From NCBI GenBank assembly GCA_002269645.1, contig NIVC01000107.1, forward strand, positions 186,001 to 250,000: DNA of 64,000 nt, in the 5' to 3' direction. Below are positions 1,584 to 3,261 of this stretch, one piece after another (within the stretch, counting starts at the first letter, position 1; every line of letters starts with the position of its first letter). Below the pieces are notes generated by a model, which searched no databases, had not been told where the DNA came from, and was given only the letters and a program-made list of their open reading frames with translations. Made by a program: the position numbers and the translations under genes. Origin of the DNA: Macrostomum lignano (taxonomy: Eukaryota).

Positions 1584-3261
1584 CTAGTCGCTGCACACGG
1601 AGTTCAAGAGGCCCACTATGGCGCATTTCAAGCCTTTGCAGCAGCGGATTTGCCGGCCCGGCATGCCCGGCACCGTGCAGTCCTCGCCGAACTCGCTGCA
1701 CCGGTGAGGCTGGCTGGGGCAGCAGCTGCCGGCCGCTGCGGGTGGGGCGGGTGATCCGAATATGTGTTTGGGTGCCTGTCTGTGCCTGTCTGCCTGTGCC
1801 TGTCTGCCCATGCCTGTCTGCCTGTGCCTGTTTGCCTGTGCCTGTCTGCCTGTGCCTGTCTGCCTGTGCCTGCCTGCCTGTGCCTGTCTGCCTGTGCCTG
1901 TCTGCCTGTGCCTGTTTGCCTGTCTGTGCCTGTCTGCCTGTGTCTGTCTGCCTGTGCCTGTTTGCCTGTGCCTGTCTGAGTGTGCCTGTCTGCCCATGCC
2001 TGTCTGCCTGTGCCTGTCTGAGTGTGCCTGTCTGAGTGTGCCTGTCTGAGTGTGCCTGTCTGAGTGTGCCTGTCTGCCTGTGCCTGTCTGCCTGTGCCTG
2101 TCTGCCTGTGCCTATCTGCCTGTGCCTGTCTGCCTAAGTGTCTGTCTGCCTGTGCCTGTCTGCCTGTTTGTGCCTGTCTGCCTGTGCCTGTCTGCCTGTG
2201 CCTGTCTGCCTGTGCCTGTTTGCCTGTGCCTGTCTGCCTGTGCCTGTCTGCCTGTGCCTGTTTGCCTGTGCCTGTCTGCCTGTGCCTGTTTGCCTAAGTG
2301 TCTGTCTGCCTGTGCCTGTCTGCCTGTGCCTGTCTGCCTGTGCCTGTCTGCCTGTGCCTGTCTGCCTGTGCCTGTTTGCCTGTGCCTGTCTGCCTGTGCC
2401 TGTCTGCCTGTGCCTGTCTGCCTGTGCCTGTCTGCCTGTCTGCCTATGCCTGTTTGCCTGTGCCTGTCTGCCTGTGCCTGTCTGCCTGTGCCTGTTTGCC
2501 TGTGCCTGTTTGCCTGTGCCTGTCTGCCTGTGCCTGTTTGCCTGTCTGTGCTTGTCTGCCTGTGCCTGTCTGCCTGTGCCTGTCTGCCTGTGCCTGTCTG
2601 CCTGTGCCTGTTTGCCTGTCTGTGCCTGTCTGCCTGTGTCTGTCTGCCTGTGCCTGTTTGCCTGTGCCTGTCTGCCTTTGCCTGTCTGCCTGTGCCTGTC
2701 TGCCTGTGCCTGTCTGCCTGTGCCTATCTGCCTGTGCCTGTCTGCCTGTGCCTATCTGCCTGTGCCTGTCTGCCTAAGTGTCTGTCTGCCTGTGCCTGTT
2801 TGCCTGTGCCTGTCTGCCTTTGCCTGTCTGCCTGTGCCTGTCTGCCTGTGCCTGTCTGCCTGTGCCTATCTGCCTGTGCCTGTCTGCATGTGCCTATCTG
2901 CCTGTGCCTGTCTGCCTGTGCCTATCTGCCTGTGCCTGTCTGCCTGTGCCTATCTGCCTGTGCCTGTCTGCCTAAGTGTCTGTCTGTCTGTCTGTCTGTC
3001 TGTCTGTCTGTCTGCCTGCCTGCCTGTCTGTCTGTCTGTCTGTCTGTCTGTCTGTCTGTCTGTCTGTCTGTCTGTCTGTCTGTCTGTCTGTCTGTCTGTC
3101 TGTCTGTCTGTCTGTCTGTCTGTCTGTCTGTCTGTCTGTCTGTCTGTCTGTCTGTCTGTCTGTCTGTCTGTCTGTCTGCCTGCCTGTCTGTGCGTCAGGA
3201 TATCAGCTTCAGACTTACCTGCAAGCCCCAGTATGAGGCAGAAGTACAGAGCTATCTGCAT
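1584..3261 (-). CDS. Small secreted cysteine-rich peptide, 64 aa, knottin-like C-C-CC-C-C framework; exons 3261-3219 and 1735-1584
   Basis: Exon 1 ATG...CTTGCAG|GTAAGT (phase 1) joins cccgcag|CG to give [64 protein letters not shown]; the N-terminus is hydrophobic. Confidence 0.75.
1770..3190. repeat. Compound microsatellite (GCCTGT/GCCTGTCT mosaic, then (TCTG)n) filling the peptide-gene intron
   Basis: Read directly from the sequence. Confidence 0.95.

What the first reader, a model, noticed from the sequence alone, without database searches (positions are those of the whole stretch)
1584..3261. Cryptic two-exon secreted knottin/toxin-like peptide
A 43-nt exon with a perfect GTAAGT donor and a 152-nt exon, separated by 1.5 kb of microsatellite, join in frame into a 64-aa peptide. 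It has a hydrophobic leader and then C-x6-C-x11-CC-x4-C-x9-C. This C-C-CC-C-C spacing is the inhibitor-cystine-knot framework of conotoxin framework VI/VII and spider toxins. An extra CC pair sits near the likely cleavage site. A gene this small and repeat-embedded is easily missed by annotation. A toxin, antimicrobial or seminal-fluid role is inference only.
Basis: partly seen in the sequence, partly recalled or inferred. Interest (0 to 1): 0.8.

Follow-up and report, generated by a model that had tools for sequence, protein, structure and literature searches.

The report
Unannotated flatworm cysteine-rich secreted peptide gene
The window comes from the flatworm Macrostomum lignano, and this site is probably a real, unannotated two-exon gene for a 64-residue secreted cysteine-rich peptide with a knottin-like cysteine pattern, but transcription, fold and any toxin role remain untested.

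Summary
A 43-nt exon (3261-3219, minus strand) ends at CAG|GTAAGT. A 152-nt exon (1735-1584) follows a C-rich tract and CAG. The two join in frame across a 1,483-nt tandem-repeat intron into a 64-aa peptide: a hydrophobic leader, a CC pair, then C-x6-C-x11-CC-x4-C-x9-C.

The window is Macrostomum lignano, a free-living flatworm whose introns are often filled with tandem repeats. Three internal tests favour a real gene:
- Exon 2 has the host genes' codon signature (GC3 0.90) and GC falls from 0.67 to 0.34 at the stop codon.
- Exon 1 is the only ATG-plus-hydrophobic mini-exon ending in GTAAGT in the window, on either strand.
- Shuffling the eight cysteines recreates a knottin-type pattern in only 2.6% of trials.

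No homologue, transcript or annotation was found. Only sub-threshold matches to spider knottin families appeared. AlphaFold2 confidence was too low (pLDDT 58-60) to test the knot. Cysteine-rich ORFs are common by chance in this GC-rich DNA, so the pattern alone is weak evidence. A flatworm knottin-fold family (UPF0506) has nearly the same spacing, but its Pfam model gave no match.

Verdict: a plausible new orphan secreted peptide. The knottin fold is unproven and the toxin role is speculation. Interest is modest.

The parts
3219..3261 (-). Exon 1: start codon plus 14 codons and 1 nt ([14 protein letters not shown] + G), the n- and h-regions of a signal peptide
   Evidence: An in-frame TGA lies 4 codons upstream of the ATG. 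It is the only ATG-plus-hydrophobic mini-exon ending at GTAAGT in the window on either strand; maximum 10-residue Kyte-Doolittle hydropathy is 2.58. It is 100% identical in the GenBank copy L001.
3213..3218 (-). 5' splice donor GTAAGT (context CAG|GTAAGT), a phase-1 junction
   Evidence: It is conserved in L001, where the first differences appear 14 and 18 nt into the intron.
1736..3218 (-). Intron, 1,483 nt, almost wholly a (GACA)n / (GACAGGCACAGGCA)n tandem array (1776-3190)
   Evidence: TRF: period 14, 101 copies, 89% matches. On the minus strand the repeat is almost free of T, so it offers few competing GT donors and no pyrimidine tract (by inspection).
1736..1760 (-). 3' splice region: the C-rich tract TCACCCGCCCCACCCGCAG ending in the acceptor AG
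   Evidence: It is the first pyrimidine-rich stretch after the repeat. The repeat itself holds many CAG|G sites but no pyrimidine tract (inspection).
1584..1735 (-). Exon 2: 50 codons plus the TAG stop, encoding [50 protein letters not shown]
   Evidence: GC1/2/3 is 0.52/0.58/0.90 in this frame, and GC falls from 0.67 to 0.34 at the stop codon. It is one of only 11 clusters in the window with such 3-periodicity, eight of which fall in identified coding regions.
1593..1700 (-). Six-cysteine core C-x6-C-x11-CC-x4-C-x9-C (residues 27-62)
   Evidence: It is the only strict match to the knottin regular expression in six-frame translation of the window. The arrangement arises in 2.6% (broad pattern) or 0.1% (narrow pattern) of shuffles of the same residues. 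The best sub-threshold PDB and Pfam matches are knottins.

Best explanation
A real protein-coding gene of Macrostomum lignano that is not in the public annotation. Two exons are joined across a phase-1 intron that sits in the signal-peptide region and is filled with a tandem repeat.

The 64-aa precursor would enter the ER through its N-terminal signal peptide. Cleavage is most likely after LGLA or AAG (inferred from the -3/-1 rule). The result would be a peptide of about 5 kDa, near neutral, with eight cysteines forming four disulfides, which is then secreted.

The C-terminal six cysteines have the spacing of an inhibitor-cystine-knot (knottin) module. The most likely product is therefore a compact, protease-resistant, disulfide-rich peptide that binds an extracellular target such as a channel, receptor or protease. 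It is less likely to lyse membranes.

- Shown: the sequence anatomy, the coding-type periodicity and the splice signals.
- Inferred: transcription, splicing, signal-peptide cleavage, disulfide connectivity and function.
For: - The organism is identified through an Mpp10 ORF identical to a protein of GCA_002269645.1, which papers name as the M. lignano Mlig_3_7 assembly.
- The exons, splice sites and frame are verified.
- Exon 2 has GC3 of 0.90 with GC1 and GC2 of 0.52 and 0.58. Host genes have GC3 of 0.83-0.89. Excluding the NGC codons, GC3 is still about 0.84 (hand count on the sequence). GC drops from 0.67 to 0.34 exactly at the stop codon.
- Such a signature occurs in 1.5% of non-repeat windows, in 11 clusters. 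Eight of these fall in identified coding regions and one is exon 2.
- Exon 1 is unique in the window as an ATG-hydrophobic-GTAAGT unit, and it lies on the right strand, in a compatible phase, at the edge of the repeat. Another hit of the looser version of that scan is the true first exon of a signal peptide peptidase gene, which shows the scan can find a real first exon.
- The cysteine arrangement is non-random given the composition.
- The only sub-threshold Pfam hits among 24,736 models are spider knottin families. The top two sub-threshold PDB sequence hits are knottins: bidentatide 8hjc and purotoxin-6 6f61.
- Repeat-filled introns of 1 kb or more are normal in this genome (PMC5730564).
- Absence from the annotation is expected. 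That annotation kept only transcripts TransDecoder judged coding and dropped transcripts overlapping repeats (PMC5730564). TransDecoder's default minimum ORF of 100 aa is my own knowledge.
- A phase-1 intron at the signal-peptide cleavage region is a known bias of secreted-protein genes (established knowledge, Tordai and Patthy 2004; not tested here).
Against: - No transcript evidence was reachable.
- No homologue was found in 5.8 billion clustered proteins by word search. None was found in 1.84 billion representatives by phmmer, where the single hit is a repetitive junk ORF.
- The exact peptide is not in the 15-billion-protein collection. That collection seems to lack M. lignano read assemblies, because the Mpp10 cluster has only NCBI and UniRef members, so this says little about expression.
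- The cysteine pattern by itself is expected about once per window under a broad definition, and Cys-rich ORFs are common here.
- AlphaFold2 gives low confidence and no knottin match.
- The leader has no positively charged n-region.
- No canonical AATAAA lies downstream, but the other genes checked in the window also lack AATAAA near their stops.
- Conservation of exon 2 in the duplicated copies could not be checked.
Confidence: 0.6

Rival explanations
1. There is no gene. An open frame in GC-rich DNA next to a microsatellite happens to carry cysteines in a knottin-like order, and a chance ATG-hydrophobic-GTAAGT unit lies upstream.
For: - The broad knottin pattern is expected 0.6-1.2 times per window in composition-matched simulations.
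- 33 Cys-rich ORF segments occur outside repeats.
- There is no homologue, annotation or transcript.
Against: - The frame-specific GC3 of 0.90 and the composition break at the stop codon are otherwise seen mainly at identified coding regions in this window.
- The exon-1 unit is unique in 128 kb of strand, yet it sits in the one place, strand and phase where the model needs it.
- The cysteine order arises in 2.6% or less of shuffles given the composition.
- Taken together, these partly independent signals make pure chance unlikely.
Confidence: 0.2
2. Exon 2 is, or recently was, coding, but the gene model is different. It could be a decaying or untranscribed duplicate. It could be an exon used with another first exon or in one transcription unit with the gene that starts about 900 nt downstream on the same strand. 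Or it could be translated unspliced from an ATG inside the repeat, giving ORF 1584..1997 of 137 aa with no signal peptide.
For: - The unspliced ORF exists, with several in-frame ATGs inside the repeat.
- A same-strand multi-exon gene appears to start at window 688 (manual splicing).
- M. lignano has polycistronic, trans-spliced transcription units: about 7% of assembled transcripts (PMC5730564).
- The genome is a recent polyploid with much redundancy, so decaying copies are expected (PMC5730564).
Against: - A cysteine-rich module without a signal peptide makes little biological sense, whereas the spliced model supplies one in phase.
- The repeat-encoded N-terminus ([14 protein letters not shown]...) is low-complexity.
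- Exon 1 with its donor is perfectly conserved in the second copy, although the expected divergence over so short a stretch is small.
- Exon 2 ends at a stop codon that coincides with the composition break.
Confidence: 0.12
3. The gene and secreted peptide are real, but the fold is not an inhibitor cystine knot. All eight cysteines, including the N-terminal CC, would form a different four-disulfide connectivity.
For: - The predicted mature peptide has eight cysteines, in the order CC-C-C-CC-C-C.
- If the last six form the knot, the first two must pair as a rare vicinal disulfide or be removed (established knowledge of disulfide chemistry).
- AlphaFold2 does not produce a confident knottin, and Foldseek finds no knottin.
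- Loop 2, at 11 residues, is at the long end for knottins (my knowledge, not tested here).
Against: - The spacings x6 / CC / x4 / x9 match those of a flatworm knottin-fold family motif (PMC8400842).
- The only weak sequence matches are to knottins.
- An Arg directly before the first core cysteine (PHR|C) could mark propeptide removal, leaving exactly six cysteines (inference).
Confidence: 0.25

Closest known systems
UPF0506 (Pfam PF11703; accession from memory), a knottin-fold cysteine-rich family found only in flatworms
   Same: - The host phylum is the same.
- A member is secreted by the tapeworm Schistocephalus solidus.
- The published motif of that protein begins C-x6-C-x7-CC-x4-C-x9-C (PMC8400842). 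That equals the spacing here in four of five intervals.
   Different: - Loop 2 is 11 residues here against 7.
- The S. solidus protein has two such modules, with 12 cysteines. This peptide has one module plus an N-terminal CC.
- The Pfam model gave no hit even at E up to 10, although HMMER filters may hide very weak matches.
- No UPF0506 sequence could be fetched for a direct alignment.
Spider inhibitor-cystine-knot toxins (Pfam Toxin_7 PF05980, Toxin_12 PF07740; for example purotoxin-6, PDB 6f61)
   Same: - The cysteine framework is C-C-CC-C-C, and the CC-x4-C...C segment aligns.
- These are the only Pfam families with any sub-threshold signal: E of 0.02-0.06 and 0.44.
- Purotoxin-6 is the second-best PDB sequence hit, at E of 0.68.
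   Different: - The scores are far below the gathering cut-offs: 15 bits against 27, and 11.7 against 21.
- Only the C-terminal half aligns.
- The source is a different phylum, with no venom apparatus.
- There are two extra cysteines.
Conotoxin O-superfamily, cysteine framework VI/VII
   Same: - It has the same abstract framework, C-C-CC-C-C.
- It is a small precursor with a signal peptide.
- Its genes have large, repeat-rich introns (my knowledge).
   Different: - There is no match to the Pfam Conotoxin family.
- It lacks the conserved O-superfamily signal sequence and the long propeptide.
- It has two exons rather than three.
- It comes from a flatworm, not a cone snail.
Plant knottin bidentatide (PDB 8hjc)
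   Same: - It is the best sub-threshold PDB sequence hit (E of 0.4), aligned over the whole core with all the aligned cysteines in register.
- It has a similarly hydrophobic last loop.
   Different: - The match is not significant.
- The source is a plant, and loop 2 is four residues shorter.
- The resemblance is best read as convergence of a common scaffold.

Membership tests
Inhibitor cystine knot / knottin (structural class) | Six cysteines in the order C-C-CC-C-C, with loop lengths in the range seen in knottins | tested here: met
   The spacing is C-x6-C-x11-CC-x4-C-x9-C at residues 27-62. The arrangement arises in 2.6% of shuffles of the same residues. Loop 2 is long.
Inhibitor cystine knot / knottin (structural class) | Disulfide connectivity I-IV, II-V, III-VI, with the third bond threading the ring formed by the other two | tested here: inconclusive
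   Single-sequence AlphaFold2 models have pLDDT of 58 and 60. Foldseek against the PDB finds nothing below E of 3 and no knottin. No homologues were available to build an alignment.
Inhibitor cystine knot / knottin (structural class) | Synthesis as a secreted precursor with an N-terminal signal peptide | tested here: met
   The h-region [12 protein letters not shown] has hydropathy of 2.58 over 10 residues. Small residues follow it at the -3 and -1 positions (A-A-G). SignalP was not available, and there is no basic n-region.
Spider ICK toxin families, Pfam Toxin_7 (PF05980) and Toxin_12 (PF07740) | A score at or above the Pfam gathering threshold | tested here: not met
   Toxin_7 scores 14.2-15.8 bits against a cut-off of 27. 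Toxin_12 scores 11.7 bits against 21.
Conotoxin O-superfamily (framework VI/VII) | The conserved superfamily signal sequence, or a match to the Pfam Conotoxin family | tested here: not met
   No such family is listed even at E up to 10. The organism is a flatworm.
UPF0506 flatworm knottin-fold family | A match to the Pfam family model | tested here: not met
   The family is not listed at E up to 10 for the precursor, the mature peptide or the core. HMMER's filters drop most matches above about 0.1, so a very weak relationship is not excluded.
UPF0506 flatworm knottin-fold family | The cysteine motif C-x6-C-x7-CC-x4-C-x9-C, followed by a second six-cysteine module (S. solidus member, PMC8400842) | tested here: inconclusive
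   Four of the five intervals of the first module are identical, but loop 2 is 11 residues rather than 7. The second module is absent.

The most novel reading that the evidence does not exclude
This is a lineage-specific, single-module knottin peptide of a free-living basal flatworm. It might be a very divergent relative of the flatworm-only UPF0506 knottin-fold family. It would be one example of a class of short secreted-peptide genes that M. lignano annotation pipelines drop systematically, because the ORF is under 100 aa and the intron is annotated as repeat. It would act as a defence or signalling ligand.
Probability: 0.3. Interest if true: 0.45.

Novelty: new member of a known kind. Interest (0 to 1): 0.3.

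Why it matters
If the gene is transcribed, it adds an orphan disulfide-rich secreted peptide to a regeneration and reproduction model organism. It would also show concretely that the M. lignano gene set misses short secreted-peptide genes whose introns are tandem repeats. Such peptides (defence, seminal-fluid or signalling molecules) evolve fast and matter for the sexual-conflict and host-defence work done in Macrostomum. A knottin in a basal free-living flatworm would also help date the flatworm-specific knottin-fold family now known mainly from parasites. It would be useful, but not surprising to a specialist. Small cysteine-rich secreted peptides with this framework have arisen many times, and one unannotated example does not open a long-standing question.

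Tried and rejected
- **Word-indexed homologue search with the 64-aa precursor.** No candidate was found.
- **Exhaustive phmmer against 1.84 billion representatives.** It gave one hit, P0001. This is a 1,267-aa repetitive junk ORF that matches the leader region in 10 weak stretches, so I rejected it as spurious.
- **PDB sequence searches.** The 50-aa query gave only a chance kallikrein match. The 39-aa core gave sub-threshold knottin hits.
- **Structure.** Two AlphaFold2 runs (precursor and mature peptide) had low confidence, and Foldseek against the PDB was uninformative.
- **Annotation look-ups.** The unspliced 137-aa ORF and ORF 179-889 are not on record.
- **Attempt to see exon 2 in the duplicated copies of the locus.**
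  - L001 (NIVC01001006.1) ends 887 nt into the intron. It contains exon 1 but not exon 2.
  - L002 (NIVC01001880.1) reaches only window base 11614, because a 5.7-kb LINE insertion uses up the flank.
  - The last homologue search used the manually spliced N-terminus of the downstream gene as an anchor and found nothing.
- **Paralogues.** None were found in the window, L001 or L002 by tblastn or by regular expression.
- **Rejected readings.**
  - The plus-strand ORFs of 385-418 aa across the region are translations of the microsatellite ([14 protein letters not shown]...).
  - An insulin-like reading fails, because the B-chain spacing does not fit (inspection).
  - An ncRNA reading has no support: Rfam finds nothing in bases 1-6000.
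- **Poly(A) signal.** The scan was uninformative. Other genes in the window also lack AATAAA near their stops.
- **Supplements of the S. solidus paper.** They hold no UPF0506 sequence.
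Full report
**Source of the window**

The 476-aa Mpp10 ORF at 15775-17205 is identical to a protein annotated on contig NIVC01001006.1 of GCA_002269645.1. Several papers name that accession as the Macrostomum lignano Mlig_3_7 assembly, and cluster members carry M. lignano names.

The window is not that contig itself. Aligned stretches are 94-99.6% identical, with kilobase indels. A third copy, on NIVC01001880.1, is about 96% identical. This fits the published redundancy of this recent polyploid: 180 Mb in duplicated blocks at least 95% identical, and 15% simple or tandem repeats (PMC5730564).

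The window shows the same character:
- 44 tandem-repeat rows.
- GC-rich exons (GC3 0.83-0.89) in AT-rich intergenic DNA.

**The observation**

All details were reproduced.
- Exon 1 is 3261-3219 on the minus strand, 43 nt, and ends CAG|GTAAGT.
- The intron is 1,483 nt. Bases 1776-3190 form one array built from (GACA)n and (GACAGGCACAGGCA)n.
- Exon 2 is 1735-1584, 152 nt. It follows TCACCCGCCCCACCCGCAG and ends in TAG.
- The phase-1 join gives [64 protein letters not shown].
- An in-frame stop lies four codons upstream of the ATG.

**Is it more than chance?**

The cysteine pattern alone is not convincing.
- In composition-matched Markov simulations, a broad knottin expression occurs 0.6-1.2 times per window. 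Only a narrow definition, chosen after the fact, is rare at 0.02-0.04.
- 33 non-repeat ORF segments in the window have at least 6 Cys in 45 residues.

The case rests on three other tests.

1. *Codon periodicity.*
   - In the proposed frame, exon 2 has GC1/GC2/GC3 of 0.52/0.58/0.90. That matches Mpp10, the kinase and the GPCR-like ORF.
   - GC falls from 0.67 to 0.34 exactly at the stop codon.
   - Among 43,954 non-repeat 150-nt windows, 1.5% have one phase at GC of 0.88 or more with the other two at 0.62 or less. They collapse into 11 clusters. One is 1573-1742, which is exon 2. Eight others fall in the thiolase, GPCR-like, signal-peptide-peptidase and LINE coding regions. Two (27562-28457) lie in a GC3-rich region I did not identify.
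   - The signal is not produced by the many TGC, GGC and AGC codons alone. By hand count on the sequence, the remaining codons still have GC3 of about 0.84.
2. *Exon 1.* It is the only ATG-started, stop-free, strongly hydrophobic mini-exon ending at GTAAGT on either strand. Loosening the donor to GTRAG gives 3-4 candidates. One of those, 52613-52671, turned out to be the true first exon of a signal peptide peptidase gene (Peptidase_A22B, 1.4e-73 for the downstream exon). Its introns are also filled with tandem repeats. The scan can therefore find a real first exon, and the 'microsatellite intron' is the normal architecture here.
3. *Cysteine order.* Shuffling the 50 residues of exon 2 recreates a broad knottin pattern in 2.6% of trials and the narrow one in 0.1%.

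**Splicing plausibility**

On the minus strand the repeat is almost free of T. It therefore offers few competing GT donors and no pyrimidine tract. The many CAG|G sites inside it lack what the proposed acceptor has, a C-rich tract directly upstream (inspection).

A phase-1 intron in the c-region of a signal peptide is a known bias of secreted-protein genes (established knowledge, not tested here).

An unspliced alternative exists: ORF 1584-1997, 137 aa, starting at ATGs inside the repeat. It has a low-complexity N-terminus and no leader, so it is the weaker model.

**Relatives**

None were found.
- The word-indexed search returned nothing.
- The exhaustive phmmer run returned one spurious repetitive ORF.
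- The exact peptide is not in the 15-billion-protein collection.

The Mpp10 cluster holds only NCBI and UniRef members, with no read-assembly members from M. lignano. The absence therefore shows only that the GenBank annotation lacks the gene. It says nothing about expression.

No gene is called over the copy of exon 1 in L001. This is expected. The deposited annotation kept only transcripts TransDecoder judged coding and removed transcripts overlapping repeat annotations (PMC5730564). A 64-codon ORF is below TransDecoder's usual 100-aa default (my knowledge).

Exon 1, its donor and 160 nt upstream are identical in L001, and differences begin 14 nt into the intron. The stretch is too short for this to be significant.

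I could not reach exon 2 in either GenBank copy:
- L001 stops 887 nt into the intron.
- L002 is pushed out of range by a LINE insertion.
- The downstream gene gave no annotated anchor.

**What it resembles**

Among 24,736 Pfam models, the only signals are sub-threshold hits to two spider knottin families:
- Toxin_7: E of 0.017-0.056, 14-16 bits against a cut-off of 27.
- Toxin_12: E of 0.44.

With the 39-residue core, the top two PDB sequence hits are knottins, both non-significant:
- The plant peptide bidentatide (E of 0.4), aligned across the whole core.
- Spider purotoxin-6 (E of 0.68).

AlphaFold2 without an alignment gave pLDDT of 58 and 60. The mature-peptide model had a short beta-hairpin, and Foldseek found no related structure. 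The knot is therefore untested.

The literature search turned up a closer lead. UPF0506 is a flatworm-restricted family described as having a knottin fold.
- Its secreted Schistocephalus solidus member has the motif C-x6-C-x7-CC-x4-C-x9-C, followed by a second module (PMC8400842).
- In Schistosoma mansoni, a upf0506 gene is a parenchyma marker (bioRxiv 10.1101/2020.02.03.932004).

The spacing here differs only in loop 2 (11 residues against 7). But the Pfam model does not match, and there is only one module. Membership is not established.

- The mature peptide has eight cysteines. If the last six make a classical knot, the N-terminal CC must form a rare vicinal disulfide or be removed. The Arg just before the first core cysteine (PHR|C) could be a propeptide site, which is inference only. 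Otherwise the connectivity is different.
- The mature peptide is about 5.0 kDa with pI of about 7.5. That does not fit a cationic membrane-active antimicrobial peptide. It would suit a target-binding ligand or inhibitor, but function is open.

**Verdict**

- A real, unannotated gene for a secreted cysteine-rich peptide: about 0.6.
- Chance, with no gene: about 0.2.
- Coding, but under another gene model, or a decaying copy: about 0.12.
- Given a real peptide, a true cystine knot is roughly even odds.

This would be a new member of a known kind of molecule. It is of modest interest, and the decisive tests (junction reads, conservation in the duplicated loci, disulfide mapping) are simple.

Noticed in passing
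window 58000-63747 (minus strand); L002 402-6149: A full-length non-LTR retrotransposon. ORF2 is 1,083 aa with endonuclease, reverse transcriptase and RNase H domains, and a 488-aa ORF1 lies upstream. It is 99.9% identical to a 5.7-kb insertion present in the duplicated locus on NIVC01001880.1 but absent at that position in the window. It is therefore a recently active element, and the insertion differs between the duplicated copies.
   Followed up: partly
window 52613-55051 (+): A signal peptide peptidase gene (Peptidase_A22B, 1.4e-73). It has a short first exon (52613-52671), and its introns are filled by tandem repeats at 52744-53384 and 53729-54371. This is the same exon / repeat-intron / exon architecture as the finding.
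   Followed up: yes
window 1-688 (minus strand): An apparent multi-exon gene starts about 900 nt downstream of the peptide gene on the same strand. It begins at the ATG at 688, has the leader-like N-terminus MASHSHRKWIGLSLPSRGQLACLCILIALQ, shows at least four exons by manual splicing, and runs off the window. Its N-terminus has no Pfam match and no protein in the collection, so it also seems unannotated.
   Followed up: partly
whole window vs L001 (NIVC01001006.1): The window is not identical to the GenBank contig that carries the same Mpp10 protein. Identity is 94-99.6%. About 3.5 kb (window 6998-10482) is missing from L001. The segment containing Mpp10 (window about 13.1-19.1 kb) is present twice in tandem in L001, at 7075-13326 and 13335-20262, the second copy lying inside the span of the annotated thiolase gene model. 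This is either a real tandem duplication or haplotype difference, or an assembly artefact.
   Followed up: no
window 15775-17205 (+) and about 18.4-26.8 kb (+): A single-exon Mpp10 gene is followed by an acetyl-CoA acetyltransferase (thiolase) gene whose introns hold many minisatellites. An older UniRef model (P0004) fuses the two genes into one protein.
   Followed up: partly
window 33412-34497 (+); 45164-47608 (+): Two more GC3-rich coding ORFs. One has a protein kinase domain (4e-19). The other is an 814-aa ORF with a weak, below-cut-off rhodopsin-type 7TM match.
   Followed up: no
window 2050-3306 (+): ORFs of 385-418 aa on the plus strand across the intron ([14 protein letters not shown]...) are translations of the microsatellite. 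They are not genes, though an ORF finder would list them.
   Followed up: yes
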